From the IMG/VR virus record IMGVR_UViG_3300017917_001342, positions 372,001 through 436,000 of that record: 64,000 nt of DNA, one strand, 5' to 3'. Positions 1 through 33,031 of the stretch are shown piece by piece. The translations under genes were made by a program, and so were the position numbers. Below the pieces are notes generated by a model, which did not search any database, was not told where the DNA came from, and was given only the letters and a program-made list of their open reading frames with translations. The first letter of the stretch is position 1; each line of letters begins with the position of its first letter.

Positions 1-345
1 ATTGCTGTAATAGTAATCAACTTCTTCATCATTTACTTTAAATCGTATCAAATGAGGAGTAGTATCAATTGGTACAATTAGTGTGCAACCTCTAGTAAAA
101 TCAGTGTGCCAGCCAGTTTCATGACCAGGTGGTACGTAGCTAAAACTATAGGTGGTAGAATCTAACAGACGATTTTTAATACGTATAGCTTCTATGCTAA
201 CTGGAAACACAATATCTCTATGTGTGCTGAAAAAGGTTTTACCTCTATCAGCAGTGTATTGCGGCCAATGTTTTATATCAGAAATGGTCTCGTATAAAAA
301 TTCTCTGTCATAATCAAGAGTTATCGGATAGATGTAGTCATCCAT
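1..345 (-). CDS. 2OG-Fe(II) oxygenase-like protein (truncated by window edge; absent from ORF track)
   Basis: Manual translation from ATG 345 is open to base 1: MDDYIYPITLDYDREFLYET...YVPPGHETGWHTDFTRGCTLIVPID, with an HxD motif. Overlaps the stop of the upstream gene. Confidence 0.55.
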   Translation of the reverse strand, partial: MDDYIYPITLDYDREFLYETISDIKHWPQYTADRGKTFFSTHRDIVFPVSIEAIRIKNRLLDSTTYSFSYVPPGHETGWHTDFTRGCTLIVPIDTTPHLIRFKVNDEEVDYYYSN

Positions 346-1359: not shown

Positions 1360-1362
1360 TTA

Positions 1363-8884: not shown

Positions 8885-8889
8885 ATATT

Positions 8890-13522: not shown

Positions 13523-13524
13523 GT

Positions 13525-14199: not shown

Positions 14200-15523
14200 G
14201 ATATTGCGGTATTATATCTAATACATTTTGGTTTCTAATTTTGTCTAGATCTTTAGTAATTTTAACAAATTGCGGTAACCATTCAGCAGAATAATCTTCG
14301 CTTAACATAAACTTTTCTACACTATCTAAGTGTTTGACAAAGTGCTTTTTAACATGTGTCGAAAAGTTAGTTGCAACTATCCAGGCTTTATATTGCTTGT
14401 AATGTTCTACTACCTGCTGCTTGATGTCAGCTGGTAATACTTTAATGTTATAGTATTTTGGGCTATGACACATATGATAAGAAACAATAGGTCTATATGA
14501 TTCAACTGGATTGAATTTTAACAGATTGCTTTCTGTTAATTTCCATTTCATGAATTCAGGAAAATGGAAAACATTAAACGGTGTTATAGTAAATGCAAAC
14601 CAGCACTTGAGATTAATATCGGTTCTTGCATCTATCTTTTTTAGATTTTCATAGACATGAGTCCATTTTGCCGGAGCCCGCTGATAATCAAATATTTCGT
14701 TGCAGGCATCTATACTTGCACCTATGCGTATTTCTTTAAAATGCTTCCACAGGTCTAATATTTTATCTGTAACGTTAGTGAGATTTGTGTTGTATTCAAT
14801 TTGAATCTCACTTGCTCTACCGTTGGCTACCAGTCGTTCTAACGATTCTATATGCTCATCAATTATAAGAGGCTCACCACCTACAATGTAAAGCTTCTTG
14901 GCATTTTTAGTATGCTGCTCAAAATTACTCCAATACATGTTGGAATTCTTAAACCAATCATATTGATCAGTTGTCCATCGACCTTTTTCATTTTTTACTA
15001 GTTGTACTCGTTCATGAGTGTCTTTGTACGATGTAGATCCCCATAGCTTTACAAAGTCATCATACCATTGATGACTATCTGTAGGACCACACATTCTACA
15101 TTTCAAATTGCAGAAGTTACCGTAGCGTATATCAAAATATTCAATATCTTGTTTAGCAGTATCTATAGTACCGTCAGCTTCAGTAATAGATGCAGCATAC
15201 TCTTTTGTTATCTCCCAATCGTTAAGTTCCATCTGTCGTCGAGATAATACGCCATTTTTTTCTTCTTGTCTGCAACGTTCGCATTCAGAATGCCACTCGT
15301 TGTTAAGCATAGTTGATCTGACGTCTTTTAGTAATGCAGCATTTCTAGCATCGTTGAAATCATCTTTGCTTGCATTGTAAGCAGTGCCATCTGATTTACG
15401 AATTATACCTTTATTAGGACTGTATGAGTTTGCATTACAACAAACTCTAAGATCGCCATTGTTACGTATGTTTATGCTGTTCCATGGTAATGGACAAAAT
15501 GTGCTTTTAGATTCTTCAGACAC
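14177..15523 (-). CDS. Radical SAM protein with N-terminal Cys-rich domain
   Basis: FCPLPW...RVCC, CERC, CNLKCRMC, IVGGEP, YNTN. Confidence 0.9.
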   Translation of the reverse strand: MSEESKSTFCPLPWNSINIRNNGDLRVCCNANSYSPNKGIIRKSDGTAYNASKDDFNDARNAALLKDVRSTMLNNEWHSECERCRQEEKNGVLSRRQMELNDWEITKEYAASITEADGTIDTAKQDIEYFDIRYGNFCNLKCRMCGPTDSHQWYDDFVKLWGSTSYKDTHERVQLVKNEKGRWTTDQYDWFKNSNMYWSNFEQHTKNAKKLYIVGGEPLIIDEHIESLERLVANGRASEIQIEYNTNLTNVTDKILDLWKHFKEIRIGASIDACNEIFDYQRAPAKWTHVYENLKKIDARTDINLKCWFAFTITPFNVFHFPEFMKWKLTESNLLKFNPVESYRPIVSYHMCHSPKYYNIKVLPADIKQQVVEHYKQYKAWIVATNFSTHVKKHFVKHLDSVEKFMLSEDYSAEWLPQFVKITKDLDKIRNQNVLDIIPQYRELFNDN

Positions 15524-15628: not shown

Positions 15629-18600
15629 TTATATAGTTCTGTTACCACCAGGCATTGGATCGCCTGTGTTAAGGATACGTATCGGTATGTAGATAAATTC
15701 GATTGCTTTTTCTGGTTTAATTGCAATGTCAATCCACAATTCGTTAGCATCTATACGTGCAGGTGTGTTGTTGCTTTCGTCACAAACTACAGCAAAGTCA
15801 TACAGCGCACGAAGTCCTACTAGGTTACCCATGAAGCTGTTGAATGTGTTAGTCACACTCTGACGTGTCTGCTGATCGTTCGGTTCAAACAAGAACGGCT
15901 TAGCCAAGTTGTCGAGTTGATACTTCATGTAGTTAATCAAACGTGCCACGTTGATTCTATCCATTGCAGATGCAACAGGACTCAATGTCTTCTGTCCGTA
16001 TATAACCAAACCGCGTCCAGGTATGAATGCAATTGGGTTAATACGATTTACGTAAAGTACATCACGTTGACCTTGGTTTAAGCTAACAGGTTGGAATGTA
16101 CCATCTGTTTTGAGATAGCCTACGCTGGTTACGCCTGTAACAAGACCACGATTGAAGCCAGCTGGTGCAAACCACGGATATGCTACTTGGTCATTGTATG
16201 CAATAGTACGCAGCGCCATTTCACTTGGTGGTACAAGTACCTGAGCACCGTCGAGGTTAGTTGCAAGTGCCCATGGATAGTATAGACCAGCGTATGGACT
16301 ACTACTAATCAAACCGTTTATACCATTTTGGTTAGCATTGTTGATATTAGTTGCCCATGCTTGCAAGCTAGTACCATCTGCGGCTAGTTCGGCTGGCGGA
16401 TCAGCAACAATGAACGCAGTTTCCTTACGGTCTGTATTGAGTGTGATCATTTCGTCGATACATTCAATATAGCCAGGTGTTGCAATCAAGTTGTAGTTAA
16501 CAGCTTCAGCACGAATTTCTTCGTTACTTGTTAATGCAGCTTGCAATGCAGTTACAATGATCTGTCGCTGTGCAGCAGAACCCATATATGGAGTACCATC
16601 TGGTGCATTACCACTTGCGGTTACCCATGCATTTGAATCATATGGTGCTTGCAAGTTAGGGAAGTAATCTACTACATAGCGTTTTACGTTGTATGTGCTG
16701 TAACGAGTGTTAAACAGCAACATACCGCTTGGATATAGTTCTGCATTAGGTGCATCGCTGTCTACATAGTTGCTAGTTACCATATCGCTTGGCAATTGAC
16801 TGCCGTTGATTAGACCGTCGTCGTTCCATCTTGCATCAGTGAATATAATTCCGCCCGGACTGCTGTGATCTGTGTTATCAACTAGTACCCAAGCACCACT
16901 TACTGCATCATATCTGTAAATTACAGGATATGGTGTTGATGCACTGTCAATCCAAATGTCGTTGTCTACAAGATCAGTACCATCGCTTTGTGTGGTTGGT
17001 TCAACACCGCTAATAATAGGACCATTAGGATCTGTTGCAGGATAACGGTTCTTATAACCCTGCCATATTTGTCCATTGCCTACCATTATATCAACACGAA
17101 GATCGGTACTGTACCAAAGGGTGCCATTTGCTGGCGGACCTGCTGGAGCCGAAGTTGATGCTGTGTAATCTAACAGTGTCCATGCTGTACCATCCCAGCG
17201 ATAAATCATGTGATTTGCTACTGGTGGGTTGCTGTTGTCATAGCGAATGTAAAGTGTGTTAGTTGACTTGTTGCTACCAAATGCAGCATTTGCAACAGCA
17301 TCACTACTATACATAGGTACATAACCTTGGTTTGGCACAGTGTTCTGTCTTACCCAATTTGTACCGTTGTACTTTTTAACTACGAAGTTTGCACCACGAT
17401 CTTGGTATGTAGTGTTTATCCAAACGTTATTTGGTGCAAGTTGTGTTAATGCACTAGGCACTGTTAATGTTGGGTAGTAGCCGTAATAAGTCAATCTACG
17501 ACCGTATACATAACCAACATCAATACCTGCACTGTTAAGCGGAGTACCACTTACATCGTTAACTGTGAACTGTGTACCATTAGTGTTTGTTATAGTTAGA
17601 TAACTGGTGTTTGTTATAGATGCTACAATTGGTCCCTGTGGGAATGCAGCATTGATTGCGTTTACAACACCTTGAAGTGTGTTGTTTGGTGCTACAGGTA
17701 CGTTAATTGTAGTAGCAATACCAGTACCAGGATCTATTGTAAATGTGTTACTGGTTAAGAAGCCCATTGCTACGTTAAATGTAGCATTACTACCAGAACC
17801 GCCGCTTACAGCAATAGGGTTAGTTGGGTTACCAGTATAATTACCTGGAGTAGTAACACTGGTAGTAGCAACACCCCATACAAATGTGAAGTTTGCATTA
17901 CTACCACTACCACTTGTACTAGTTGGTGCAACAGGGTTACTAGGTGTAACACCTGTGTACTGGCCACCTGATACCAACGCAACAGAAGTAATAACTGTAC
18001 CACTCACACCGTTTACACGCAATATAATCGGACTAGTGTAGTTTGGACCTGTGAATGTCAATGTGTCGTTAAGCTGATAGTTTGAACCACCGGCACTTAC
18101 TGTTGGTGTACCAACAACTTGGATTGCAGTGACAGTTAATTGTCCTGCAACTGAATATGTACCGCTGCCAAACAGTGTTAACAAATCACCAACTGCATAT
18201 CCTGTACCAGGTGCTACTACAGTTGCAGAGTTAACTTTGGTAGTTGCTGCAACAAATGTTGGGTTAGAAACTGTGCCAGTTATAGAACCATAATATGTTG
18301 TAGATGTTGAAATACCTGCATCTAACCAAGGTGTTTGTGTACCAGCTTGAGTACTGATGTCATTAAACTGTGTGTTTGTACCATCATAGTTTGTAATTCT
18401 CAAGTAACTAGAACTACCAACTGTGTATTTGCTTGCGAATGCATTAAAGCTGTTTGCATCTAACACATCATTGATATCAGAAATAAAACTATCAAGTGAT
18501 GTACCAGACAATGTGATAATAACAGGTGAACTATTACCAATTGCAATAGTGCATTGTTCAGCTGCTGTGAATGTTGGATTTGCTACAGTACCTGTTATAA

Positions 18601-19663
18601 CACGTGGTTCTGCTTCTCTCCATCCCCATCCTGGGAATGAACTGTCAGTACCGCCAACTTTGAACCAATCATCTGCACTGGTGTATGTTGTAGTCTGTGT
18701 GATTTTTTGCCATATGCTGTTCTGGTTTACACCTGAGGCATCTGCATATGATACAACTACATAATCACCCGGATTGCCATATGATGCTGCTGGTACTACA
18801 AAGTTAGTAGGATTTGCAACAAGAGCAAGATCTGTTAGAACGCTAGTAGTTGAACCGCTAAGACTAATTGCAGTATCTGGATTTGTGCAGACTATACGCA
18901 GATAGTACATATCGTATATTGCACTAACAGTTACATCTGGTTTGCCTTCTCGTACATAGACTGATGCACTTATACCTAACAATGCCACTGTTTGAGTGTT
19001 GTTGATTGCGCTTGCTACATCTGTAACGCTCATGTTAGCTGCGATTGCAACCGATGCACCGTTGATAACAAGTGTACCGGCAGTTGTAATGATGTCTGAA
19101 CTACCGCTAATGCTGATATCACCACTTTGTACCATTCTTCTAAGATTGGTAGCAGTGTCTAATACAGTAGGTGTCTTGTTAGCCCATGCTAATGCACTGT
19201 TTACATTACCGTTGCTTTGGAAAATACCAAAAGTAGATGCAGCAGTGTCTAACCAGTATTGGTTAGTACTTGGTTCACCGGTTGGTACAGTTGAACTAGG
19301 TACCATCTGACCTAAATCAACATCTGCTCTTAGAATATATGCAGTGTTTGCAATGCCAAGATATTGATATGCTGTAAACAAACCTAGTTCGTTTAGTTGG
19401 TTGTCGTATTGCGGAGTACCAGCAGCAGAATAAAATACAGGAGTACCAAATGTCTGTAACAGATCTCTTTGACTTGTTACTAGGTACAATTGGTTAGCAT
19501 TAGCTGCCAGTGTACCTTGTGCATAGGTAGTAGCACTACCAGGTACAAATTTATTAGCAGCAGTTGCTATTGCTATAAGAGGTATTGTGCCAGTTCCTGC
19601 GCTGGCATACTGGCTTTCGTCTGTAACGGTAACGCTTACGCCAGGTGAAACTAAAATTGCCAT
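15629..19663 (-). CDS. gp18: Contractile tail sheath protein with very large internal insertion
   Basis: N-terminal LVSPGVSVTVTDES and C-terminal YPW...PWFAPAG.NRG...INPI...IYGQKTL...RINVARL...FEPND...IKPEKAIEFIYI sheath motifs. Confidence 0.93.
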   Translation of the reverse strand: MAILVSPGVSVTVTDESQYASAGTGTIPLIAIATAANKFVPGSATTYAQGTLAANANQLYLVTSQRDLLQTFGTPVFYSAAGTPQYDNQLNELGLFTAYQYLGIANTAYILRADVDLGQMVPSSTVPTGEPSTNQYWLDTAASTFGIFQSNGNVNSALAWANKTPTVLDTATNLRRMVQSGDISISGSSDIITTAGTLVINGASVAIAANMSVTDVASAINNTQTVALLGISASVYVREGKPDVTVSAIYDMYYLRIVCTNPDTAISLSGSTTSVLTDLALVANPTNFVVPAASYGNPGDYVVVSYADASGVNQNSIWQKITQTTTYTSADDWFKVGGTDSSFPGWGWREAEPRVITGTVANPTFTAAEQCTIAIGNSSPVIITLSGTSLDSFISDINDVLDANSFNAFASKYTVGSSSYLRITNYDGTNTQFNDISTQAGTQTPWLDAGISTSTTYYGSITGTVSNPTFVAATTKVNSATVVAPGTGYAVGDLLTLFGSGTYSVAGQLTVTAIQVVGTPTVSAGGSNYQLNDTLTFTGPNYTSPIILRVNGVSGTVITSVALVSGGQYTGVTPSNPVAPTSTSGSGSNANFTFVWGVATTSVTTPGNYTGNPTNPIAVSGGSGSNATFNVAMGFLTSNTFTIDPGTGIATTINVPVAPNNTLQGVVNAINAAFPQGPIVASITNTSYLTITNTNGTQFTVNDVSGTPLNSAGIDVGYVYGRRLTYYGYYPTLTVPSALTQLAPNNVWINTTYQDRGANFVVKKYNGTNWVRQNTVPNQGYVPMYSSDAVANAAFGSNKSTNTLYIRYDNSNPPVANHMIYRWDGTAWTLLDYTASTSAPAGPPANGTLWYSTDLRVDIMVGNGQIWQGYKNRYPATDPNGPIISGVEPTTQSDGTDLVDNDIWIDSASTPYPVIYRYDAVSGAWVLVDNTDHSSPGGIIFTDARWNDDGLINGSQLPSDMVTSNYVDSDAPNAELYPSGMLLFNTRYSTYNVKRYVVDYFPNLQAPYDSNAWVTASGNAPDGTPYMGSAAQRQIIVTALQAALTSNEEIRAEAVNYNLIATPGYIECIDEMITLNTDRKETAFIVADPPAELAADGTSLQAWATNINNANQNGINGLISSSPYAGLYYPWALATNLDGAQVLVPPSEMALRTIAYNDQVAYPWFAPAGFNRGLVTGVTSVGYLKTDGTFQPVSLNQGQRDVLYVNRINPIAFIPGRGLVIYGQKTLSPVASAMDRINVARLINYMKYQLDNLAKPFLFEPNDQQTRQSVTNTFNSFMGNLVGLRALYDFAVVCDESNNTPARIDANELWIDIAIKPEKAIEFIYIPIRILNTGDPMPGGNRTI

Positions 19664-24154: not shown

Positions 24155-24769
24155 ATGGTAACAAAAGAACAACTTCTTAAGATGTTTCCTAAAATCACCA
24201 AAGCAACTCTTGATGAAATATGGCAACCTCTAAATGATGCAATGGCTGAATTTGGTATAGACACTCCTGCAAGAAAAGCAATGTTTCTTGCACAGTGCGC
24301 ACATGAAAGTGCTATGTTTAGTAGGGTGACAGAAAACTTAAATTACAGAGCAGAAACACTACTCAAAGTATTCCCAAAATATTACAAAACTCTAAACGAA
24401 GCTGTTGCAGATGCTAGAAAACCTGAACGAATTGCCAACCGAGTTTACAGCAGTAGAATGGGCAACGGCGATGCTAATTCTGGTGACGGTTATCGTTATA
24501 GAGGTCGTGGCCTTATACAGCTTACTGGTAAAAACAACTACACCGAGTGTAGCAAAGGTCTTAATATAGATCTAATCAAAACACCAGAATACTTAGAAAC
24601 TGCTGTGGGTGCTAGTCGATCAGCAGCATGGTTTTGGTCGCATAACGGACTTAATAAATTTGCAGACGCAGGTGATATTCTAGGTGCTACTAAACGTATA
24701 AATGGTGGAACCATTGGGTTAGAAGAAAGAATCGAACTGTATAAAATTGCAAAATCAGTCTTGATTTGA
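24155..24769 (+). CDS. GH19 chitinase-like endolysin
   Basis: FLAQCAHES, ENLNY, YRGRGLIQLTGKNNY, TKRINGG. Confidence 0.9.
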   Translation: MVTKEQLLKMFPKITKATLDEIWQPLNDAMAEFGIDTPARKAMFLAQCAHESAMFSRVTENLNYRAETLLKVFPKYYKTLNEAVADARKPERIANRVYSSRMGNGDANSGDGYRYRGRGLIQLTGKNNYTECSKGLNIDLIKTPEYLETAVGASRSAAWFWSHNGLNKFADAGDILGATKRINGGTIGLEERIELYKIAKSVLI

Positions 24770-25034: not shown

Positions 25035-26684
25035 ATGGAATATTGGTATACAGAACAATTACGAAATTATAGATTGCAATTCATACGTGCATTTAGCAAT
25101 TTCTATTATAAAACTGGAAAAAATGCAGATGGTACCGAAGCATTGGTACGAGTTCCGTGTCGATACGGCGACCCGACACGTATTGCCGAAATGGTAGTCA
25201 GAGGCAATAGTGAAAACAAAGTTCTCACTGTGCCATTTCTGACTTGTTACATCGGCGGAATGAGCATGAGTGCTAATCGTAGACAAGCACCTCAACTAAC
25301 TGAACTTATTCAAGTAGATGAACGTGAATATGACGAAAACAATCAGCAGTATCTAAACACGCCGGGTAACCGTTATACAATAGAACGTTACATGCCAGTA
25401 CCGTATGTAATGACAATGCTTGTAGATCTATGGTCTAATAACGAAAGTGTTAAAGAACAAATTATCGAACAGATAATGGTACTTTATAACCCTGCTATTG
25501 AAATACAGACCAGTAACAACCCATTAGACTGGACTGTGTTAAGTTATATCGAAATGCAAGACAACATCACATGGACCAGTCGCAGTATACCAATCGGAAC
25601 TGAAAATCCAATTGATGTGTTGACTATGACTTTCAATTTCCCAATATGGATTAACCCACCTGCAAAAGTCAAAAGACAACAGATCATTGAAAATATTATT
25701 GCAACTATCATTGATGCAAATCCAAAAGATCCTGCAATCGTAGAATGGAGCGAATACGAATTTCTAAATAGAAAAACCTGGTCGCCCGGCGACTACAGTA
25801 TCGAGTTATCATGGCAAGGTAATAATACCTATGCATTGAGCTTAACCAGTCGCGCAGGGGATCCAAAAGATTACAGCAATCAGGCCACTGTTACATTTTC
25901 ATCAGTTAACCCAATATTGACACCAGGAACCAGTTTTAAATTTAATGACATTGTAATTAACGTAACAACCAGCAATGTATCAACGTTCGTAGATCAAACC
26001 GCAGCACAAATGGCGGGTACTAGCTACAACATACAATTGCAAAATTACAATCAGATCATGTTTATCAACAACACCGGTGGTGACAATAAGTTTGAAAATG
26101 TAAACGGTACACCTTTATCTCAAATGGGTCTATTGTCTGGTACATATCCAGGTGGTGATCTAGCTTGGTGGAGGTTGTTACTAACCTATGGTACACTACA
26201 GCCGTATTCGCAGTACGGTATCAACGCAAGTCAGCTAGCAGTTAAACTGACACTTGATAACACTACCGACCAAGCTATAGGTTGGTTAGACTATCATCCA
26301 ACTAATCAAAATCTCTTATTGTGGCATGTAGATCCAGAAAGTTTACCTAAAACTACGTTAACACCAATCAATGCTATAGTAAATCCGTTGACAAAAGGAC
26401 CGAACGCAGGCCTACCAGAAACAAACGTCGGCCAGCGATATCTGTTAACAGAAAAGCCAGCAGAATCCAGTGTTGCTTGGGATATTGTAAATGCTGAAGC
26501 GGATGATATTATAGAGTTCGACGGTACTGTGTGGTCAGTATCGTTTAATTCAGCAAATGCTAAAGACAAAGTTTATTTTGTTACAAATCTATTCACAGGA
26601 AAACTGTTAATATGGGATGGCACACAATGGAGCGAGTATATACTGCCAGCGTACCGTCCTGCATACTGGCGACTTGTTCTATAA
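25035..26684 (+). CDS. gp15: Tail sheath stabilizer/terminator (T4 gp15-like) with C-terminal extension
   Basis: LVRVPCRYGD, PVPY...DLWSNN...EQIMVLYNP, FNFPIWINPPAKVK. Confidence 0.8.
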   Translation: MEYWYTEQLRNYRLQFIRAFSNFYYKTGKNADGTEALVRVPCRYGDPTRIAEMVVRGNSENKVLTVPFLTCYIGGMSMSANRRQAPQLTELIQVDEREYDENNQQYLNTPGNRYTIERYMPVPYVMTMLVDLWSNNESVKEQIIEQIMVLYNPAIEIQTSNNPLDWTVLSYIEMQDNITWTSRSIPIGTENPIDVLTMTFNFPIWINPPAKVKRQQIIENIIATIIDANPKDPAIVEWSEYEFLNRKTWSPGDYSIELSWQGNNTYALSLTSRAGDPKDYSNQATVTFSSVNPILTPGTSFKFNDIVINVTTSNVSTFVDQTAAQMAGTSYNIQLQNYNQIMFINNTGGDNKFENVNGTPLSQMGLLSGTYPGGDLAWWRLLLTYGTLQPYSQYGINASQLAVKLTLDNTTDQAIGWLDYHPTNQNLLLWHVDPESLPKTTLTPINAIVNPLTKGPNAGLPETNVGQRYLLTEKPAESSVAWDIVNAEADDIIEFDGTVWSVSFNSANAKDKVYFVTNLFTGKLLIWDGTQWSEYILPAYRPAYWRLVL

Positions 26685-26687
26685 ATA
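26680..26687 (+). promoter_or_regulatory. Late promoter TATAAATA (full T4 consensus)
   Basis: Immediately upstream of in-frame ATG 26695. Confidence 0.6.
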
Positions 26688-26694
26688 TGTCATC

Positions 26695-27447
26695 ATGATA
26701 ACCGAGAAACTCGAAAAATTAAACATAGACAAACAACAGTTTGAACAGGTGTTTACACCTGAAGTACGCAAAGTCGCAGACACACTTGAAAAATATGGAT
26801 TTGAAATACGAGTAGTCGGCGGAGCAGTTAGAGATTTTATCATGGGTAAACAGCCTAGAGATATAGATTTCGCAACTGATGCAGATCCCAGTGAAATCAT
26901 CTATATTTTTAATTTAGAAGGTATCGAGCACGACGACTGGGGAATCGGTCATGGCACAGTAAAAGCAGTGTTTGGCGACGACAAAGTAGATGTAACCAGT
27001 ATTGCATACAAACTAGAAGTTAAAGACGGCAAGGTTAGGATCATACGCGGTCAGGATTGGGAACAAGATGCACTGCATCGCGACCTAACTATGAACAGTA
27101 TGAGTATAGATCGCAACGGTACTCTATATGATTATACAGATGGTCTTCGCGACATTCGCAACAACACAGTGCAGATGAATGAAATAACTAGAAGCCGTTT
27201 ATCAGAAGATCCGCATTTGATCATGCGCTGGTTTAAAGCACTAGGACAGTTTCCAAAAGCCAAATGGCCTAAAGAAGATTTCAATGCTATCAAAGCAAAC
27301 ATTCCAGCATTGGAAAAAATCAAAGACGAAGAAAAAACCGACAGAGAACTAAGTGGTATTATGACTACTAAACACGGCTTGCGCATTTTAGAATTGATGT
27401 GTAAAATGGGTGTAGGCAAATATCTCGGAATAGATTGCAATCTGTGA
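26695..27447 (+). CDS. Class II nucleotidyltransferase (CCA-adding/poly(A) polymerase family), short, non-canonical
   Basis: VVGGAVRD, RDIDFATD, RDLTMNS, LYDYTDGLRD, EDPHLIMR. Confidence 0.85.
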   Translation: MITEKLEKLNIDKQQFEQVFTPEVRKVADTLEKYGFEIRVVGGAVRDFIMGKQPRDIDFATDADPSEIIYIFNLEGIEHDDWGIGHGTVKAVFGDDKVDVTSIAYKLEVKDGKVRIIRGQDWEQDALHRDLTMNSMSIDRNGTLYDYTDGLRDIRNNTVQMNEITRSRLSEDPHLIMRWFKALGQFPKAKWPKEDFNAIKANIPALEKIKDEEKTDRELSGIMTTKHGLRILELMCKMGVGKYLGIDCNL

Positions 27448-27463
27448 TAAGACACAGCACAAT

Positions 27464-28321
27464 TTGTGCATGTCAAAAGACCTCATAATCGGTTGTTTTA
27501 CCAACTACAACTGGAATAAAATAAAATTCTGGGTTAACAGCATAGACGCTAGTGGATTCACTGGCGACAAAGCTATGATTGTTTATAATTGCGATATACA
27601 AACTGCGCAAACACTAGCAAATCGCAATTTTAAAATCATGGCTTTTAATCAAGATAAAAATACAGGTAACTTATTCTATGATCAGCAATTGATAATTGTT
27701 GTAGAGAGATTTCTGCACCTGTGGCAATTCATAAGCAGATTAACGGAAGAAACTGCTTACAGGTATGTAATACACACAGACGTTAAGGACGTTGTATTCC
27801 AAACTAATCCAAGCGATTGGTTATCTGCAAACATGGGCGATGCTAAAATACTTGCAAGCTGCGAAAGCCTGCAATATCAACATGAGCCTTGGGGCAATGA
27901 AAACATGTATTACAGTTTCCCATGGCTCTATGACAAAATGAAATCACAGCCAATCTGGAATTGCGGAGTACAAGCTGGTGTACCTGAAACAATGAAAGAT
28001 CTTTGGATAAACATCTATTCGTTGTGTAAAGGTAATCGTGTACCAAATCCAGACCAGGCTGCATATAATGTGTTGTTAAATTTGGAACCATACAAAAGCA
28101 TTACTAAGTTTTCAATGAGCGAAAATGGTTGGGCTTGCCAAGCTGGTACAACAGTTGACCCGTCTAAAATAAATCAGTTCAAGCCGCATCTACTCGAAGC
28201 ACAACCTCTATGGAACGGCGATTGTGCAACAACTAGCACTGGTAAAATTCACGCAGTGTTACATCAGTACGATAGAATACCCACATGGAAATCAATAGTA
28301 GAAGCAAAATATGCAAATTAA
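27464..28321 (+). CDS. GT-A fold glycosyltransferase-like protein
   Basis: HTDVKDVVFQTNP, NCGVQAG, DQAAYN, LHQYDR. Start probably ATG 27470. Confidence 0.65.
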   Translation: MCMSKDLIIGCFTNYNWNKIKFWVNSIDASGFTGDKAMIVYNCDIQTAQTLANRNFKIMAFNQDKNTGNLFYDQQLIIVVERFLHLWQFISRLTEETAYRYVIHTDVKDVVFQTNPSDWLSANMGDAKILASCESLQYQHEPWGNENMYYSFPWLYDKMKSQPIWNCGVQAGVPETMKDLWINIYSLCKGNRVPNPDQAAYNVLLNLEPYKSITKFSMSENGWACQAGTTVDPSKINQFKPHLLEAQPLWNGDCATTSTGKIHAVLHQYDRIPTWKSIVEAKYAN

Positions 28322-29276
28322 TTTAGATGACTTATATCGTGCAACAGCACAAATGCTTGCATCTATACAACCACCAAATTTTAAGCCAGGACGTAGTATT
28401 GTAACCAGCGTATACGGCAAAGAAATTGCAAGCGGTTATGTTCTTATGCGAGAACTGGTACGACTTGGAGTTGAAATACCAATTGAAATATTTCATAGGC
28501 CTGGTGAGATTACTAGCGAACAAGCTGAGATTTTAAAACGCCCATCACCAAGCACTATCACTGTTAGAGAAATACAAGGCAACGCTAAAGATTTTACAAC
28601 ACCATATGGCACTAAAGCTGGATGGAGTACAAAAATTTATGCACTGTGGGAAAGCGAATATGCAGAAAATCTATGGTTAGATGCAGACAGTTTTCCAATA
28701 CAAAAACCTGAATTTTTATTTGATGACGTTGAATACCGTCAAAAAGGCAGTGTGTTTTGGCGCGATGTGTTTAGTACAGATCGTGCAAATCGCTATCATG
28801 ATGCTGCACCAATGTGGCGAGTTTTCGACGTTAGTCCAAACGACGGCGAACCGTTTGAAACAGGTCAGTTGTTGATAGATAAAATTCGCTGCTGGTCGCA
28901 GCTTAATCTAGTAAAACACTACGCAGACAACTGTGAAGTCTATTACAACTTTGGAGGTGATGCCGAGACATTTCGTATGGCATGGCAGCACATGCATTTG
29001 CGAGCAGGTAACACGTTGCAGTACATTAACTATCATACAGACCCAAATGTACCCTATGGCTTTATGCCATTTGGTCCGTTTCACAAAGGACATGCTAATC
29101 AGTATCGCAAATGGGGTGGTGGTACTGTAATGGTACAGCGTGACCGCAATGGCGCAGAATTGTTCAATCATCGTAATATGGAAAAATTCACTCTAGGTGA
29201 TAATCCATTTTATCGTGATATACAAAATGAAGAACTATACCACAAGCACATAGAAGATTTAAGGAAACTGGTATGA
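28311..29276 (+). CDS. GT71/MNN-like alpha-mannosyltransferase-family glycosyltransferase
   Basis: IPIEIF, LWLDADSFP, VFWRD, FETGQLLIDK, GDAETF. Confidence 0.7.
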   Translation: MQINLDDLYRATAQMLASIQPPNFKPGRSIVTSVYGKEIASGYVLMRELVRLGVEIPIEIFHRPGEITSEQAEILKRPSPSTITVREIQGNAKDFTTPYGTKAGWSTKIYALWESEYAENLWLDADSFPIQKPEFLFDDVEYRQKGSVFWRDVFSTDRANRYHDAAPMWRVFDVSPNDGEPFETGQLLIDKIRCWSQLNLVKHYADNCEVYYNFGGDAETFRMAWQHMHLRAGNTLQYINYHTDPNVPYGFMPFGPFHKGHANQYRKWGGGTVMVQRDRNGAELFNHRNMEKFTLGDNPFYRDIQNEELYHKHIEDLRKLV

Positions 29277-30412
29277 TAGACAATGTAAGCACAGTTACGT
29301 TTCCAGCCGAATGGAATATGAAACGAGAGCCTGCAAGACCGGAAAATCTAAGATTAGATTACTGCGGTGGTATGAAATTCAACGACAATTTTGATTGGCA
29401 TAATATTTGGTATGACTGTATTCAATTAAACGAAACACAGACTATACTAATAGGACCGCCACTGTATGACGCTAAAGACTGGTTTATCAAAAACGCAGGA
29501 TTTGCTGATAGAGATGGTAATTTTCTAAACTATCAGTTCTACGATCTTGACCGTGTCAGCTATACACTTGTAATGACTAACCGAATTGACACAGACATTG
29601 TGTTATTAAGCAAAGACACTGCACCTGTGCCTATCGAAGTACGTCACAATGACGGTTATTTCAACGGACACAAAGTAATGGTAACATTACAACGTGACAA
29701 TCCAATTGAATGGATAGAACAATGGATGGAATATCACTACAAAGTACATGGTATAGATGCATTCCTCATTTACGATAACAGTAGCAAAACCTACACACCT
29801 GGTGAATTGGATCATCAACTTAGCAGACCCTATTTTAAATTAAAAATAGTACCATGGCCATATCCATATGGACCACAAGGCAGTGATTATGCACCTTGGG
29901 ATAGTGATTACGGACAATACTGCATGTTAGAACATGCAAAGTATCGTTATCTCAGCAATGCTGCATTAGTATTGAACAATGATATTGACGAATTGATAGT
30001 AACACAGGGTCCAACACTAGATCAGATACAACAACAATTAGACACAGGTCCGCATCATTGCTTGTATTATCTAGGCAAGTGGATCGAACCCTACGACATA
30101 CCAAATAGAACCAGTGCGCATTTAGTTGAACAGCACAAACGCAAATTCAAAGACTATTGCTGCACAGACTCAAACAACAAAACAGGCATAGGTAACAAAT
30201 GGATGTTGGTACCTAAACACAATATGCAATACCAATGGAGAGTGCATCACATTGCAGGACCTGCTGGTCAGAGTACAGACCTCTATTATGGACATTACCT
30301 TGCTATGAACACCAACTGGAGTTGGAAACGAGATGAGTATAAAGGCAATGTCGACAACCTAAGGCCAGAACCTTGGTTGTTTACAGCATTAAACAAAATG
30401 GCACAACAATGA
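29273..30412 (+). CDS. GT92/GT2-like glycosyltransferase
   Basis: IEQWMEYH...GIDAFLIYDNSS, VPWPYP, NDIDELI. Confidence 0.65.
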   Translation: MIDNVSTVTFPAEWNMKREPARPENLRLDYCGGMKFNDNFDWHNIWYDCIQLNETQTILIGPPLYDAKDWFIKNAGFADRDGNFLNYQFYDLDRVSYTLVMTNRIDTDIVLLSKDTAPVPIEVRHNDGYFNGHKVMVTLQRDNPIEWIEQWMEYHYKVHGIDAFLIYDNSSKTYTPGELDHQLSRPYFKLKIVPWPYPYGPQGSDYAPWDSDYGQYCMLEHAKYRYLSNAALVLNNDIDELIVTQGPTLDQIQQQLDTGPHHCLYYLGKWIEPYDIPNRTSAHLVEQHKRKFKDYCCTDSNNKTGIGNKWMLVPKHNMQYQWRVHHIAGPAGQSTDLYYGHYLAMNTNWSWKRDEYKGNVDNLRPEPWLFTALNKMAQQ

Positions 30413-31383
30413 AATTATTATTCGTAGTTCACAGATATTATCCGTTCCCTGGCGGTAGTGAGTATTATGTTCAGGCAATGGCAGAAGAAGCACTGGCTAG
30501 AGGTCATCAGGTTGCTGTGTTAGCAGGTGAGCACCAAGGTGATCAAAACGGAGTTACAGTAACTAATCAGGCTCAGGTGTTAATGGAGCCATGGGATCTT
30601 ATAGTTGTACACGGAGGCGATGTTGCTGTTCAAAACTTTGTGTTAAGCAATGCAACAAACATACCTAGTCCAATACTATACATGCTGATTTTACCAAGTC
30701 ACAGTCAGGTATGTGTACAAGCTATGAAAGATTGTGCATATCTTGGATGGAGTACACCGGAAGATCTTGCGCATATAAAACAATACGGATATGAACACAA
30801 GGCTGTTAGAATACGGCATGGCATTAAACTTGAAGACAGCATTGGTTCACTAGGGTTCAAAGCCAAATACGGGATACCAGAAGACAAAGCTATGGTATTG
30901 AGCTGCGGTGGGTATTGGCCCAATAAAAAGATGAGAGAGCTCGCAGATGTGTTTCTCAATGCCAATATAGAAGACACAGTGTTAGTAACAACAGGTTACG
31001 ACAACCGAATGAATCTCATGCCAGATCCTGTACCTGGCCGAATCATACCGTTGTTGATAGAAGATAAAGCCGATGTACTCAGTGCAATCAGAGAAGCCGA
31101 CATCTACTATATGCACAGTAGTCAAGAAGGCTTTGGTCTTGTTATTTTGGAAGCAATGTTAAACCGCACACCCTGGGTAGCCAGAGAAATAGCAGGTGCT
31201 GCTATGCTTAGACGTTTTGGCAAAACCTATCGCACAGACGACGAACTGCGATATATTATGAGTAACAACATGCCAACCATAGAAGAGCTTGACAACGCAC
31301 AGGAATATGTGTTAAAAAATCATTTGATCAAACACACAGTTGACGACATCCTGTCAATTCTAAGCTGGCGAAAAATTCCATGA
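30409..31383 (+). CDS. GT4 (GT-B) glycosyltransferase
   Basis: MKLLFVVHRYYPFPGGSE, IRHGI, SSQEGFGLVILEAM. ATGA overlap with the previous gene. Confidence 0.85.
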   Translation: MKLLFVVHRYYPFPGGSEYYVQAMAEEALARGHQVAVLAGEHQGDQNGVTVTNQAQVLMEPWDLIVVHGGDVAVQNFVLSNATNIPSPILYMLILPSHSQVCVQAMKDCAYLGWSTPEDLAHIKQYGYEHKAVRIRHGIKLEDSIGSLGFKAKYGIPEDKAMVLSCGGYWPNKKMRELADVFLNANIEDTVLVTTGYDNRMNLMPDPVPGRIIPLLIEDKADVLSAIREADIYYMHSSQEGFGLVILEAMLNRTPWVAREIAGAAMLRRFGKTYRTDDELRYIMSNNMPTIEELDNAQEYVLKNHLIKHTVDDILSILSWRKIP

Positions 31384-32126
31384 CATATAAAGTGTACTCA
31401 TCTGCTAACAAAGTAGGCAATGTCTTTAAAAGTGCAGATGGTACACCTCAGGTCAAGCGCATTGTGTTACAAGACATTACTCCCACTGTGGAATGGTTAG
31501 AATCAATCACAGGGTTGAAACTACTAAACAATTTGCTCGGATCTGCTGGTAAAAAAGCATCAAGCGGCGATATAGATATCGCAGTTGATCAAAACACCAT
31601 TACCAAAGATGAGTTGATTGCAAAACTTGTTGCAGTTTCAGATAACGCTTCTGTGAAGAAAAGTGGTATATCTGTACATTTTAAATCTCCGATTAAAGGC
31701 GATGCTGTTAACGGATATGTTCAGGTAGACTTTATGTTTGTAGACGACATAGAGTTTGCAAAATTTGGATTGTTTTCAGCCGGCGATGCTAGTAAGTTTA
31801 CAGGTGCAATACGAAATTTTCTATTGCACCACCTTGCTAAATCAGTTTCTGCTAACATGAAATTTAGCTGGCAACGTGGATTAGTGAACACAGATACCAA
31901 TACAATCATTACTAAAGACCCCGATAAGATTGCAGAAATCGTATTAGGTAAGGGTTGTACCAGATCAGATGCAAACAGCGTAGAAACAATAATTTCTTCT
32001 ATTAAAAACAATATGATACATATTGCATATCTAACAATGCTACGTGACACTTCACAAAACGAAAATGATGTAGATGCAGCTAAATCTATACTAGAATTAA
32101 TTATGCAGCCTGTGCATATTGCTTAA
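31380..32126 (+). CDS. DNA pol-beta superfamily nucleotidyltransferase-like protein
   Basis: LLGSAGKK..SGDIDIAVD (hGS-x-DxD) and third Asp in VQVDFM. Confidence 0.65.
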   Translation: MTYKVYSSANKVGNVFKSADGTPQVKRIVLQDITPTVEWLESITGLKLLNNLLGSAGKKASSGDIDIAVDQNTITKDELIAKLVAVSDNASVKKSGISVHFKSPIKGDAVNGYVQVDFMFVDDIEFAKFGLFSAGDASKFTGAIRNFLLHHLAKSVSANMKFSWQRGLVNTDTNTIITKDPDKIAEIVLGKGCTRSDANSVETIISSIKNNMIHIAYLTMLRDTSQNENDVDAAKSILELIMQPVHIA

Positions 32127-32663: not shown

Positions 32664-32969
32664 TTAGAAATTGAAAGTTTTTGTGCTAGACATTGTTGAT
32701 GTTTCGTATTGCTTATAAAGGTTAGATTCAATCTCGCTTTTATTGATTTTGCTAAAAACCCAGCTATTAACAGTGTCAGATGATATATTTGCAAAATCTA
32801 CAAAGTTATTTGGATCTGCAGGCGGTACGTCTACCATTCCACTAGCTTTAAAAACTGCACCAGTTGTTGCAGTTGCAATGCAATACCATTCTACACCTGT
32901 TATTACATTTTTCAAAAGTTCTGTACTATGAATAATGTGCGCAGGGCCTAGCTTCCATTCATAAATCAT
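32664..32969 (-). CDS. Conserved small virion-associated phage protein
   Basis: SD GGAG and late promoter upstream. W..., VITGVEW..., FVDFANISSDTVNSWV pattern. Confidence 0.55.
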   Translation of the reverse strand: MIYEWKLGPAHIIHSTELLKNVITGVEWYCIATATTGAVFKASGMVDVPPADPNNFVDFANISSDTVNSWVFSKINKSEIESNLYKQYETSTMSSTKTFNF

Positions 32970-32987: not shown

Positions 32988-32995
32988 TATTTATA
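32988..32995 (-). promoter_or_regulatory. Late promoter TATAAATA
   Basis: Just downstream of the gp23 terminator and 19 nt upstream of ATG 32969. Confidence 0.65.
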
Positions 32996-33001
32996 GTAAA
33001 G

Positions 33002-33031
33002 AAAAGCCTCGGGATTTCTCCCGAGGCTTTT
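33002..33031 (-). terminator. Intrinsic terminator after major capsid gene
   Basis: AAAAGCCTCGGGA-TTTC-TCCCGAGGCTTTT, a 13-bp perfect stem. Confidence 0.9.

What the first reader, a model, noticed from the sequence alone, without database searches (positions are those of the whole stretch)
27464..31383. Four-family glycosyltransferase operon including a fungal-type GT71/MNN-like enzyme
Seen: four coupled glycosyltransferases (GT-A, GT71-like, GT92-like, GT4) directly behind late structural genes. Known: GT71 and GT92 are mainly eukaryotic glycan-elongating families, unlike T4 DNA alpha/beta-glucosyltransferases. Inference: a stepwise oligosaccharide assembly line for virion glycosylation (T/S-rich sheath, fibres, gp5 are candidates) or host-surface remodelling.
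Basis: partly seen in the sequence, partly recalled or inferred. Interest (0 to 1): 0.62.

Follow-up and report, generated by a model that had tools for sequence, protein, structure and literature searches.

The report
Jumbo-phage sugar-chain assembly gene island
A 519-kb freshwater phage carries four tightly coupled, soluble sugar-adding enzymes that its uncultured relatives share, next to a swappable set of sugar-making genes; they most likely build a variable glycan on the phage's own particle proteins, but the target is inferred, not shown.

Summary
Window 27470-31383 (+) encodes four translationally coupled glycosyltransferases. The first has no sequence family but a GT-A fold. The others are a compact GT71 (best structural match yeast Mnt2p, Z 23.2), a GT92-like enzyme and a GT4. 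All four keep their catalytic motifs. The genome is a complete 518,643-bp freshwater jumbo myovirus, with Sinorhizobium phage Phosso and Agrobacterium phage Atu_ph07 as its nearest cultured relatives. Across about 60 metagenomic loci the order gp15 > CCA-like NTase > ORF1 > GT71 > GT92 > [variable cassette] > GT4 is conserved. The cassette holds extra GTs (GT34-like, CAP59-like) and nucleotide-sugar pathways: DegT, dehydratases, an FkbM methyltransferase, ThDP enzymes and heptose genes. That fits a stepwise, diversifying glycan assembly line. The enzymes are soluble and acidic. The genome has one canonical ThyA, no C5-methyltransferase and no TET, so the known DNA glycosylation routes look unlikely. 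No lipid-carrier export genes lie in the island. Glycosylation of virion proteins is the best-supported target (about 0.45) but is not shown. "Fungal-type" is partly a naming artefact, because Alphaproteobacteria carry homologues about 50% identical. Verdict: a new variant of a known kind, of moderate interest.

The parts
25035..26684 (+). gp15-like tail sheath stabiliser/completion protein. It is the conserved upstream anchor of the island.
   Evidence: PF16724, 63.9 bits, and phrog_11196, 279.9 bits. Present upstream of the island in 42 of 60 loci.
26695..27447 (+). Short CCA-adding/poly(A)-polymerase-like nucleotidyltransferase (head domain only, 250 aa). It usually lies between gp15 and ORF1. 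Its role in the glycan pathway is unknown, and it is probably a tRNA-repair gene.
   Evidence: PF01743, 93.5 bits. NCBIfam CCA tRNA nucleotidyltransferase, 118.7 bits, below the cut-off. Present in 42 of 60 loci and absent in several (L002, L033, L053, L057). The ATG at 26695 follows the gp15 stop.
27470..28321 (+). ORF1: a glycosyltransferase with a GT-A fold and no sequence family (retaining GT6/GT8/GT24-like). It is the first gene of the conserved core.
   Evidence: AF2 pLDDT 95.6. Foldseek best matches are bovine alpha-1,3-GalT and the ABO transferases, then WbbM, UGGT and a GT8 protein, at E about 1e-9 and TM about 0.57. Invariant D104/D107 (TDVKDV), N164-x-G166, D195-Q-A-A-x-N200 and H265-Q-x-D-R269. 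The family has 2,103 protein clusters, none with a Pfam domain. Present in 56 of 60 loci.
28311..29276 (+). Compact soluble GT71-family glycosyltransferase (321 aa) with an Mnt2p/Mnn1-like GT-A fold.
   Evidence: PF11051, 74.5 bits. Profile hit to yeast Mnt2p 7xjv at E 1.7e-5, which aligns D124-A-D126 with the Mnt2p DXD (D277/D279) and K108 with K261 (residues from PMC13756512). AF2 pLDDT 91.6. VIA-align Z 23.2, rmsd 3.0 A, 277 residues, model 1-317 against chain 26-518.
29273..30412 (+). GT92-like (DUF23/GT2_4-related) glycosyltransferase with a GT-A fold, 379 aa.
   Evidence: PF01697, 37.5 bits, and PF13704, 23.6 bits. Invariant D239 and E240 with near-invariant D237 (NNDIDE) across 17 orthologues. 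The nearest Atlas clusters carry PF01697 and are bacterial. Present in 50 of 60 loci.
30409..31383 (+). GT4-family (GT-B type) glycosyltransferase, 324 aa. It closes the conserved frame of the island.
   Evidence: PF00534, 34.2 bits; PF13692, 34 bits; phrog_2170. Invariant E240-x7-E248 (EGFGLVILE) across 14 orthologues. Present in 42 of 60 loci, always downstream of the variable cassette.
31380..32126 (+). ORF5: a phage-only protein resembling a pol-beta nucleotidyltransferase (DUF6267-like). It is translationally coupled here, but it is not a constant member of the island.
   Evidence: No Pfam, PHROG or NCBIfam hit. It carries a GDIDIAVD motif. Atlas structural neighbours are DUF6267 and viral hypothetical proteins (TM about 0.8), with a weak NTP_transf_2 signal. 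Paralogues of 245-800 aa occur in either orientation between the GT4 and the capsid gene in relatives.

Best explanation
The four genes form the conserved frame of a cytoplasmic glycan-assembly island. This island is carried by a clade of uncultured freshwater jumbo myoviruses.

Proposed mechanism:
- Four soluble, metal- or nucleotide-sugar-dependent transferases add sugars one after another to an acceptor inside the infected cell. They are ORF1 (retaining-type GT-A), GT71 (retaining; a mannosyl-type donor is inferred), GT92-like (inverting GT-A) and GT4 (retaining GT-B).
- In relatives, a cassette inserted between GT92 and GT4 supplies further transferases and the pathways for unusual nucleotide sugars. 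The result is a glycan with a constant core and a lineage-specific outer part.
- In the window's phage the cassette is empty. Nucleotide-sugar enzymes are encoded elsewhere in the genome.
- The most likely acceptor is one or more of the phage's own virion proteins (sheath, fibres or capsid decoration), giving the particle a variable sugar coat.

Shown: the enzyme families, the intact catalytic motifs, the coupling, the synteny, the variable cassette, the solubility, and the lack of known DNA-acceptor pathways.

Inferred: the order of action, the donors, and the protein acceptor.
For: - Families, folds and motifs.
- Translational coupling, and no plus-strand terminator inside 25035-32126.
- Conserved order SHEATH< ... 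gp15> CCA> ORF1> GT71> GT92> [cassette] GT4> ... MCP< in about 60 loci from IMG/VR and ENA, on contigs up to 493 kb.
- The cassette encodes GT34-like and CAP59-like GTs, DegT aminotransferase, 4,6-dehydratases/epimerases, an FkbM methyltransferase, split transketolase/ThDP enzymes, an NTP-transferase-HAD fusion, GHMP kinase plus SIS (heptose route), an HpcH aldolase and a mannose-6-P isomerase-type cupin. Sugar chemistry this rich and this variable is typical of exposed glycans.
- The window's own genome encodes GalE-like and other epimerase/dehydratases, an NDP-sugar dehydrogenase, a sugar-1-P nucleotidyltransferase and at least 3 further GT2 genes.
- No transmembrane segment in any of the four GTs, and all are net acidic.
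- One ThyA-family gene that passes the thymidylate-synthase equivalog cut-offs, no C5-methyltransferase and no Tet/JBP hit.
- The island sits inside the virion module (virion protein, gp13-like adaptor, sheath, gp15, capsid, portal, gp5/gp6-like baseplate).
- Candidate acceptors exist: giant S/T-rich proteins (26-30% S+T) and at least 6 proteins with collagen-like G-x-T repeats.
- Precedent: phage-encoded GTs next to structural genes glycosylate capsid and tail-tube proteins of mycobacteriophages (Freeman et al. 2023, as cited in PMC12619734).
- Variation among close strains in other freshwater metagenomes falls mostly on third codon positions.
Against: - No direct evidence identifies any acceptor.
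- The slot after gp15 is a cargo hot spot. Phosso and Atu_ph07 carry NAD-salvage genes there, so position alone does not imply a structural role.
- Collagen-like and S/T-rich proteins also occur in relatives without the island, so they do not co-vary with it.
- In a few relatives the island lies elsewhere (L002, L058, L063).
- No late-promoter evidence could be obtained. TATAAATA is rare and not enriched.
- The bacterial GT71 homologues are lone genes among housekeeping genes and give no clue to the acceptor.
- A distant ORF1 homologue in Virus Rctr41k lies near a C5-cytosine methyltransferase.
Confidence: 0.45

Rival explanations
1. DNA hypermodification. The transferases build a mono- or oligosaccharide on a modified base of the phage DNA to block host nucleases, as in T-even phages, RB69/DLP3 (arabinosyl-5-hydroxycytosine) and the 5mYOX-associated phage GTs.
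For: - Phage GT-A and GT-B enzymes are known to glycosylate DNA, with diverse glycans and multi-GT clusters (bioRxiv 10.1101/2023.12.21.572611; PMC13326640).
- A distant (25% identity) ORF1 homologue in Virus Rctr41k lies about 5 kb from a C5-cytosine methyltransferase and a second methyltransferase.
- A T4 gp1-like dNMP kinase gene lies nearby, though Phosso, which lacks the island, has one too.
Against: - Known pathways need a divergent ThyA homologue or a C5-MT plus TET-like oxygenase, usually clustered with the GTs.
- The complete genome has a single ThyA, which passes the bona fide thymidylate-synthase cut-offs (355 bits against 327). It has no C5-MT and no Tet_JBP hit. The Tet search lacked a positive control.
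- All four GTs are net acidic.
- Amino, methylated, branched and heptose sugar pathways in the cassette are unlike the known DNA glycans.
- The island lies in the virion module, not with replication or nucleotide genes.
Confidence: 0.12
2. Host envelope remodelling. The soluble GTs act at the inner face of the membrane on host lipid-linked intermediates (LPS core, O-antigen, capsule or glycolipid). This would change the infected cell's surface, for superinfection exclusion or to prevent progeny from re-adsorbing to debris.
For: - Cytoplasmic GTs of O-antigen and capsule pathways are likewise soluble or peripheral GT-A/GT4 enzymes.
- The island's architecture, a variable cassette between conserved flanks, resembles O-antigen and capsule loci.
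- GT4 hits include LTA-anchor, teichuronic-acid and EPS transferases, all far below their cut-offs.
- Phage GTs that change host serotype are known (reviewed in PMC12619734).
Against: - The island holds no initiating phosphoglycosyl transferase, flippase, polymerase, ligase or any membrane protein. That holds for the window and for the loci examined.
- The known serotype-converting systems belong to temperate phages, and no integrase or lysogeny module was seen near this locus.
- A lytic jumbo phage has little time to gain from surface change.
- The GT71 homologues in Alphaproteobacteria are not in envelope-glycan clusters.
Confidence: 0.13
3. Another soluble target. The enzymes might glycosylate a host or phage non-structural protein, an RNA (the conserved neighbour is a CCA-like nucleotidyltransferase, and RtcB follows in one relative), or a small molecule. 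Alternatively they might make a free cytoplasmic oligosaccharide.
For: - The CCA-like NTase is adjacent in 42 of 60 loci, and RtcB lies downstream in L002.
- The structural neighbours of the GT71-like and ORF1 proteins include enzymes that act on soluble proteins: glycogenin, UGGT and the Skp1 alpha-galactosyltransferase.
- In bacteria the GT71 homologue is a lone gene among housekeeping genes.
Against: - The CCA-like gene is missing in several island-bearing loci, and ORF5/RtcB are not constant.
- A large, fast-diversifying sugar-pathway cassette is hard to explain for an intracellular regulatory modification.
- No precedent is known to me for multi-GT RNA glycosylation in bacteria or phages.
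Confidence: 0.15

Closest known systems
Mycobacteriophage virion-glycosylation operons (Che8, Corndog, Myrna; Freeman et al. 2023, cited in PMC12619734)
   Same: Both are phage-encoded clusters of 2-4 soluble glycosyltransferases, sometimes with methyltransferases. Both lie beside structural genes and build O-glycans in the cytoplasm on the phage's own capsid or tail proteins.
   Different: The phage group (jumbo T4-core myoviruses of probable Alphaproteobacteria), the GT families (GT71, GT92, a family-less GT-A) and the large swappable nucleotide-sugar cassette all differ. Glycosylation of the virions is not demonstrated here.
Giant-virus autonomous glycosylation (chlorovirus PBCV-1 capsid GTs; Mimivirus fibril glycans). 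This comparison rests on my own knowledge; the PBCV-1 capsid GT is mentioned.
   Same: In both, the virus encodes cytoplasmic GTs plus its own rare-sugar nucleotide pathways, clade-specific in content, to decorate virion surface proteins. 'Eukaryote-named' GT-A families are involved in both.
   Different: The host domain and virus realm differ. Here the genes form one compact operon-like island. No homology to the giant-virus enzymes was tested.
Saccharomyces cerevisiae Mnt2p / GT71 (PDB 7xjv; PMC13756512)
   Same: It is the best structural match (Z 23.2, 277 residues). The DXD motif and the mannose-binding lysine align. The GT-A N-domain and at least part of the family-specific C-terminal region are covered.
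   Different: The phage protein has 321 aa against 548. It has no membrane anchor or stem, about 15% identity, and an unknown donor and linkage. It works in the bacterial cytoplasm, not the Golgi lumen.
Phage DNA glycosylation systems (T4 alpha/beta-GT; RB69/DLP3 arabinosyl-5hoC; 5mYOX-associated GTs)
   Same: These are also phage-encoded GT-A/GT-B enzymes, sometimes several in a row, with diversifying glycans.
   Different: Those systems depend on a ThyA-homologue or a C5-MT/TET step, which this genome lacks. Their GTs are clustered with nucleotide-metabolism genes.
'Moraphages', aquatic jumbo phages with four core putative GT orthogroups (PMC12619734)
   Same: They are aquatic, uncultured jumbo phages with T4-like structural genes and DnaJ. 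Four glycosyltransferase orthogroups belong to their near-core genome, and their function is left open between DNA, host and virion.
   Different: Their genomes reach only 307 kb, and predicted hosts are Bacteroidota. I could not establish whether their four orthogroups are these four families, because record names did not match.
Bacterial O-antigen and capsule loci; Bacillus anthracis BclA collagen-like glycoprotein (own knowledge)
   Same: Both show a conserved frame with a hypervariable middle of GTs and NDP-sugar genes. For BclA, O-glycans sit on the Thr of G-x-T collagen-like repeats, a repeat type that is abundant in this phage's giant proteins.
   Different: This island has no Und-P machinery. 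The collagen-like proteins do not co-vary with the island.

Membership tests
CAZy GT71 / Pfam PF11051 (Mannosyl_trans3) | Significant match to the family profile | tested here: met
   PF11051 scores 74.5 bits against a gathering score of 22, but only over profile positions 2-144 of 273. The family profile A1 hits Mnt2p at E 1.7e-5. CAZy's dbCAN HMM was not available.
CAZy GT71 / Pfam PF11051 (Mannosyl_trans3) | GT-A N-domain with a Mn-binding DXD and the sugar-binding Lys (Mnt2p D277/D279, K261) | tested here: met
   D124-A-D126 and K108 align to these residues and are invariant in 25 homologues (residues from PMC13756512).
CAZy GT71 / Pfam PF11051 (Mannosyl_trans3) | GT71-specific C-terminal domain that forms the acceptor site and supplies a third metal ligand (Mnt2p N459) | tested here: inconclusive
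   The structural alignment spans model 1-317 against chain 26-518 (Z 23.2, 277 residues), 5 Z units above GT8/GT24. However, the phage protein is about 200 residues shorter, and no residue-level equivalence to N459 could be read from the tools.
CAZy GT71 / Pfam PF11051 (Mannosyl_trans3) | GDP-mannose donor with alpha-1,2/1,3-mannosyl transfer; type II Golgi membrane topology | tested here: not met
   The topology is not met: there is no hydrophobic segment (max KD19 1.02). Donor and linkage cannot be tested in silico.
CAZy GT92 / Pfam PF01697 | Profile match above threshold and a conserved acidic metal-binding motif | tested here: met
   PF01697 scores 37.5 bits against 23, over profile positions 20-171 of 249. 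D237/D239/E240 are invariant or nearly so. The nearest Atlas clusters carry PF01697. The orthologue on one contig carries no precomputed Pfam hit, so the match is marginal across the clade.
CAZy GT4 / Pfam PF00534 (Glycos_transf_1) | Profile match and the EX7E motif of retaining GT-B enzymes | tested here: met
   PF00534 scores 34.2 bits against 26.4, and PF13692 scores 34 against 27. E240-x7-E248 is invariant in 14 orthologues. The fold was not modelled.
GT-A fold glycosyltransferase (ORF1) | Rossmann-like GT-A fold with an acidic metal/nucleotide-sugar motif after beta4 | tested here: met
   pLDDT 95.6. At least 500 PDB matches with E <= 0.001; the 50 listed are glycosyltransferases, led by GT6 alpha3GalT and the ABO transferases (E 1e-9, TM 0.57), then WbbM, UGGT and a GT8 protein. 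Invariant D104/D107, a DQAAxN motif and an HQxDR motif. It is not a member of any sequence family in Pfam, NCBIfam, PHROGs or PDB, and not detectably related to the GT71 neighbour.
Phage DNA-glycosylation pathway | An enzyme that creates a hydroxyl acceptor on a pyrimidine (divergent ThyA homologue, or C5-MT plus TET/5mYOX) | tested here: not met
   The only ThyA-family gene passes the thymidylate-synthase equivalog cut-offs. There is no PF00145 match and no PF12851 match (that control set had no positive).
Und-P-dependent surface glycan pathway (O-antigen/capsule type) | An initiating phosphoglycosyl transferase, flippase or ABC exporter, polymerase or ligase in the locus | tested here: not met
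   None was found among the Pfam hits of the island genes in the window or in the relatives examined. The four GTs have no transmembrane segments. The rest of the genome was not scanned for these families.
Phage virion-glycosylation system (mycobacteriophage type) | A glycan covalently attached to virion structural proteins and dependent on the phage GTs | not testable with these tools
   This needs virions. Only context is available: the island lies within the structural module, and candidate S/T-rich and collagen-like acceptors exist.

The most novel reading that the evidence does not exclude
A whole clade of freshwater jumbo phages carries a self-contained glycosylation factory that needs no lipid carrier. 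Its core uses a previously unrecognised GT-A family (ORF1, over 2,000 protein clusters, no Pfam) together with compact cytoplasmic versions of 'Golgi-type' families (GT71, GT92, and in relatives GT34, GT69/CAP59-like and GT62/Anp1-like). The factory coats virion fibres, sheath or capsid with a lineage-specific glycan. Its outer sugars (amino, methylated, branched, heptose) are swapped by cassette exchange. This would be a phage counterpart of giant-virus fibril glycosylation and of bacterial O-antigen diversity. It might also work together with the hydroxylase- and radical-SAM-rich protein-tailoring cluster behind the sheath gene.
Probability: 0.35. Interest if true: 0.72.

Novelty: new variant of a known kind. 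Interest (0 to 1): 0.55.

Why it matters
If the glycan is on the virion, these abundant and so far uncultured freshwater jumbo phages would wear a strain-variable sugar coat. That would bear on adsorption, on stability, on grazing and adhesion in water, and on how such phages evade host receptors or enzymes.

The island also has practical value:
- It offers a compact set of soluble, probably E. coli-expressible versions of GT71 and GT92, and in relatives GT34 and GT69, families otherwise studied as Golgi membrane proteins.
- It defines a large GT-A family with no annotation at all.
- It gives a clear comparative marker, a conserved frame with a variable cassette, for studying glycan diversification in viruses.
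- It shows that the 'fungal' label of PF11051 hides bacterial and phage members, which matters for annotation and for ideas about where these families came from.

Tried and rejected
1. Near-identical DNA and tblastn searches of 50,697 deposited phage genomes found no match for the GT71-like or GT92-like proteins. The island is unknown among cultured phages in that collection, apart from records that may be hidden as 'own'.
2. T4-type late promoter TATAAATA: only 3 copies in the window (7.4 expected by chance) and 26 in the genome, not enriched upstream of genes. It is unusable as timing evidence. The sigma-70 scan came in below the shuffled expectation.
3. Collagen-like (PF01391) proteins as a marker that co-varies with the island: rejected, because Phosso and Atu_ph07 have them too.
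4. The S/T-rich sheath as a special acceptor: its 20% S+T is above the genome mean of 12.6%, but the richest proteins are giant fibre-like ORFs outside the window. This does not discriminate.
5. The bacterial neighbourhood of the alphaproteobacterial GT71 homologues holds housekeeping genes only, with no functional clue.
6. ORF1 and the GT71-like protein as paralogues: no profile-profile similarity.
7. PDB sequence searches with single sequences and with the ORF1 profile found nothing useful.
8. Matching the loci to the named moraphage genomes failed, because record names differ.
9. The PF20706 'GT4-conflict' hit (27.4 bits over 50 residues) is only the shared GT4 motif and was not taken as evidence for a defence-system role.
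10. The RNA-seq contigs (run X12) lie on the CCA, GT71, GT92 and GT4 genes. They are contigs from an RNA library and cannot prove transcription.
11. Complex prediction and the large representative-protein search were not used. No binding claim is made, and the family scans settled the identities.

Full report
**What is there**

The window is bases 372,001-436,000 of a single 518,643-bp viral contig with direct terminal repeats, rated complete. Its major capsid protein is a T4 gp23-type protein. It is 76% identical to that of Sinorhizobium phage Phosso and 65-68% identical to those of PA5oct and CBB. The genome is therefore a jumbo myovirus of the Phosso/Atu_ph07/PA5oct/CBB kind. Near-identical sequence occurs in a pond metagenome, the probable source, and close strains occur in several freshwater and aquatic metagenomes.

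On the plus strand seven genes are packed without room for a terminator:
- a gp15-like sheath stabiliser (25035-26684);
- a short CCA/poly(A)-polymerase-like nucleotidyltransferase (26695-27447);
- ORF1 (27470-28321);
- a PF11051/GT71 protein (28311-29276);
- a PF01697/GT92-like protein (29273-30412);
- a GT4 (30409-31383);
- ORF5 (31380-32126).

Three junctions are ATGA overlaps and one is an 11-nt overlap. The surrounding genes are structural: a virion protein, a GH19-type endolysin, a gp13-like adaptor, a 1,344-aa sheath, the capsid protein, the portal, and gp5- and gp6-like baseplate proteins.

**Checking the four family calls**

*GT71.* Pfam gives 74.5 bits against a cut-off of 22. A profile of 25 homologues hits the only solved GT71 structure, yeast Mnt2p (7xjv), at E 1.7e-5. 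That alignment places the invariant D124-A-D126 on the Mnt2p DXD (D277/D279) and the invariant K108 on the mannose-binding K261 (residues from PMC13756512). The AlphaFold model has pLDDT 91.6. It matches Mnt2p best by Foldseek (E 1e-11) and by VIA-align (Z 23.2, rmsd 3.0 A, 277 residues, model 1-317 against chain 26-518). That is 5 Z units above WbbM, glycogenin, LgtC and UGGT. It is a compact GT71 without a membrane anchor.

*GT92-like.* Pfam gives 37.5 bits against 23. The NNDIDE motif is conserved.

*GT4.* Pfam gives 34.2 bits against 26.4. The EX7E motif is invariant.

*ORF1.* It matches nothing by sequence in Pfam, NCBIfam, PHROGs or PDB. Its model (pLDDT 95.6) is a GT-A fold closest to the retaining GT6, GT8 and GT24 enzymes. 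Its invariant D104/D107, NxG, DQAAxN and HQxDR motifs recall GT8-type signatures; that resemblance is my reading, not a test. Its family comprises at least 2,103 protein clusters, none with a Pfam domain.

None of the four enzymes has a hydrophobic segment, and all are net acidic.

**Comparative genomics**

The GT71-like protein has at least 146 homologues at 48-95% identity, many on contigs of 100-493 kb. I collected about 60 loci from IMG/VR and ENA and clustered their ORFs.

The order SHEATH< ... gp15> CCA> ORF1> GT71> GT92> [cassette] GT4> (ORF5 paralogues) ... MCP< recurs throughout. ORF1 is present in 56 of 60 loci, GT92 in 50 and GT4 in 42; most absences coincide with contig ends.

In the window and its closest relatives GT92 abuts GT4, or is separated from it by one small gene or an HNH endonuclease. 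In more distant relatives 5-12 genes are inserted there:
- GT34-like and CAP59/Anp1-like transferases;
- DegT aminotransferases;
- several 4,6-dehydratase/epimerase genes;
- an FkbM methyltransferase;
- split transketolase or acetolactate-synthase-type ThDP enzymes;
- an NTP-transferase-HAD fusion;
- GHMP kinase plus SIS (the GDP-heptose route);
- an HpcH aldolase, an FMN dehydrogenase and a mannose-6-P-isomerase-type cupin.

This is the logic of an O-antigen or capsule locus: a constant frame with a diversifying middle.

The window's phage has the minimal frame. Elsewhere it encodes nucleotide-sugar enzymes, including a GalE-like epimerase, further epimerase/dehydratases, an NDP-sugar dehydrogenase and a sugar-1-P nucleotidyltransferase, plus at least 3 more GT2 genes.

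**What is the acceptor?**

*DNA.* Every known phage DNA glycosylation route starts from a hydroxylated pyrimidine. That base is made by a divergent ThyA homologue or by a C5-methyltransferase plus a TET-like oxygenase, usually clustered with the GTs. This complete genome has one ThyA-family gene, and it passes the thymidylate-synthase equivalog cut-offs (355 bits against 327). It has no C5-methyltransferase and no Tet_JBP hit. The Tet search had no positive control. The enzymes are acidic, and the cassette's sugar chemistry is unlike the known DNA glycans. The only hint for DNA is that a 25%-identical ORF1 homologue in Virus Rctr41k lies about 5 kb from a C5-cytosine methyltransferase.

*Host envelope.* The island contains no initiating transferase, flippase, polymerase or any membrane protein. 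The phage shows no lysogeny genes near the locus. Action on host lipid-linked intermediates cannot be excluded.

*Virion proteins.* The island lies in the structural module. Mycobacteriophages give a precedent (Freeman et al. 2023, cited in PMC12619734). The genome encodes many candidate acceptors: giant proteins with 26-30% Ser+Thr and at least 6 proteins with collagen-like G-x-T repeats.

Two checks weaken the positional and acceptor arguments. In Phosso and Atu_ph07 the slot after gp15 holds NAD-salvage genes, so it is a cargo hot spot. Collagen-like proteins also occur in those island-less phages.

I therefore rate virion or phage-protein glycosylation at about 0.45, DNA at about 0.12, host envelope at about 0.13 and other soluble targets at about 0.15. 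The remainder is unassigned.

**'Fungal-type'?**

PF11051 rang in none of 14 control prokaryote genomes. However, a scan of GTDB species genomes found homologues of 47-51% identity on large chromosomal contigs (up to 1.26 Mb, GC 67%) of uncultured Alphaproteobacteria, including a Bauldia MAG. They are lone genes among housekeeping genes: CobT, a histidine kinase, an AsnC regulator, a DNA-alkylation repair protein and Mrp.

The GT92-like protein's nearest named clusters are bacterial, mostly Pseudomonadota. So the eukaryotic flavour is partly a naming artefact.

It remains notable that several families named after Golgi enzymes co-occur in this phage clade's island: GT71, GT92, GT34, CAP59 and Anp1. 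The alphaproteobacterial homologues fit the hosts of the nearest cultured relatives, Sinorhizobium and Agrobacterium.

**Expression and selection**

Small contigs from one freshwater RNA-seq run lie on the CCA, GT71, GT92 and GT4 genes at 93-99% identity, and one of them spans the GT71/GT92 junction. Contigs from an RNA library do not prove transcription. Differences among close strains in DNA metagenomes fall mostly at third codon positions. Together with the invariant catalytic residues, this indicates functional genes under purifying selection.

**Literature and novelty**

A 2025 paper on aquatic 'moraphages' (up to 307 kb) notes four near-core putative GT orthogroups. It leaves their role open between DNA, host and virion (PMC12619734). 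I could not establish whether these are the same genes.

I found no description of any of the following:
- the GT71/GT92/GT4 plus family-less GT-A frame;
- its variable cassette;
- a phage GT71.

No match exists among 50,697 deposited phage genomes.

I class this as a new variant of a known kind, namely phage- or virus-encoded glycan assembly, of moderate interest. The main open question is the acceptor.

Read laying was given 5,601 letters. No alternative genetic code was needed. The large representative-protein search was not used. No step needed referral.

Noticed in passing
window 338-15523 (- strand), directly downstream of and co-directional with the sheath gene 15629-19663: About 19 tightly packed ORFs form what looks like a proteusin/RiPP-like or protein/nucleoside tailoring factory in a phage. 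They include five radical-SAM proteins (4281-5420; 6667-8160, with a B12-binding domain; 8890-10035; 12626-13522; 14177-15523). Also present are a SET-domain protein (1363-1842), an Asp/Arg beta-hydroxylase-like cupin (1805-2575), an Asn-synthase/PP-loop protein (3649-4284), a QueC-like PP-loop protein (5958-6680) and a SAM methyltransferase (12088-12642). The cluster might cooperate with the GT island.
   Followed up: partly
G000:C1:361990-367351 (+), 5-10 kb upstream of the window start: A nucleotide-sugar tailoring set: an FA-desaturase-like protein, an NAD epimerase/dehydratase, an NDP-sugar dehydrogenase, an aminotransferase-like protein, an Asp/Arg-hydroxylase-like cupin, a redoxin, a dTDP-sugar-isomerase-like cupin and a GNAT.
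   Followed up: partly
G000:C1:489900-495448 (+), outside the window: A sugar-1-P nucleotidyltransferase is followed by a 407-aa RuBisCO large-subunit-like protein (PF00016, 135.8 bits; nearest to type III / RLP, below the cut-offs). Then come a DUF7796 protein, a GT2-TPR fusion and a TPR protein. A DnaJ gene lies just upstream.
   Followed up: partly
window 31380-32126 (+), and loci L005, L007, L014, L038 etc.: ORF5 belongs to a phage-only family that resembles pol-beta nucleotidyltransferases (DUF6267-like). Paralogues of 245, about 530 and about 800 aa lie in either orientation between the GT4 and the capsid gene. Function unknown.
   Followed up: partly
window 26695-27447 (+): A minimal (250-aa) CCA-adding/poly(A)-polymerase head-domain protein is wedged between gp15 and the GT genes in most relatives. 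In locus L002 an RtcB RNA ligase follows the island.
   Followed up: partly
loci L009, L010, L012, L013, L022 (between GT92 and GT4): A 191-aa HNH endonuclease gene is inserted inside the GT operon in some close relatives. It looks like a homing-endonuclease insertion.
   Followed up: no
window 33002-33031 (-) and 32988-32995 (-): A strong 13-bp-stem terminator lies right after the major capsid gene. A TATAAATA box follows it, 19 nt upstream of the 101-aa ORF 32664-32969. The motif is otherwise rare in the genome.
   Followed up: partly
G000:C1:16840-20802, 246445-251400, 499000-511402, 114416-116845 (outside the window): At least 6 giant proteins carry collagen-like G-x-T repeats (43 PF01391 hits, for example GPTGYTGPTGVTGAT). 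There are also fibre-like proteins with 26-30% Ser+Thr. The island-less relatives Phosso and Atu_ph07 have fewer such hits, 9-11.
   Followed up: partly
window 24155-24769 (+): A GH19/chitinase-type endolysin domain protein (phrog_181, 290 bits) sits inside the tail-completion module immediately before gp15, as in Phosso and Atu_ph07.
   Followed up: no
loci L075-L078, L081 (Alphaproteobacteria MAG chromosomes): A lone GT71-like gene (47-51% identical to the phage protein) sits in conserved synteny between a DNA-alkylation-repair gene and a 3-hydroxyisobutyrate-dehydrogenase-like gene, with no other glycan genes nearby. Its cellular role is unknown.
   Followed up: partly
window 1-64000: No tRNA or tmRNA genes in this 64-kb stretch of a 519-kb phage.
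   Followed up: yes
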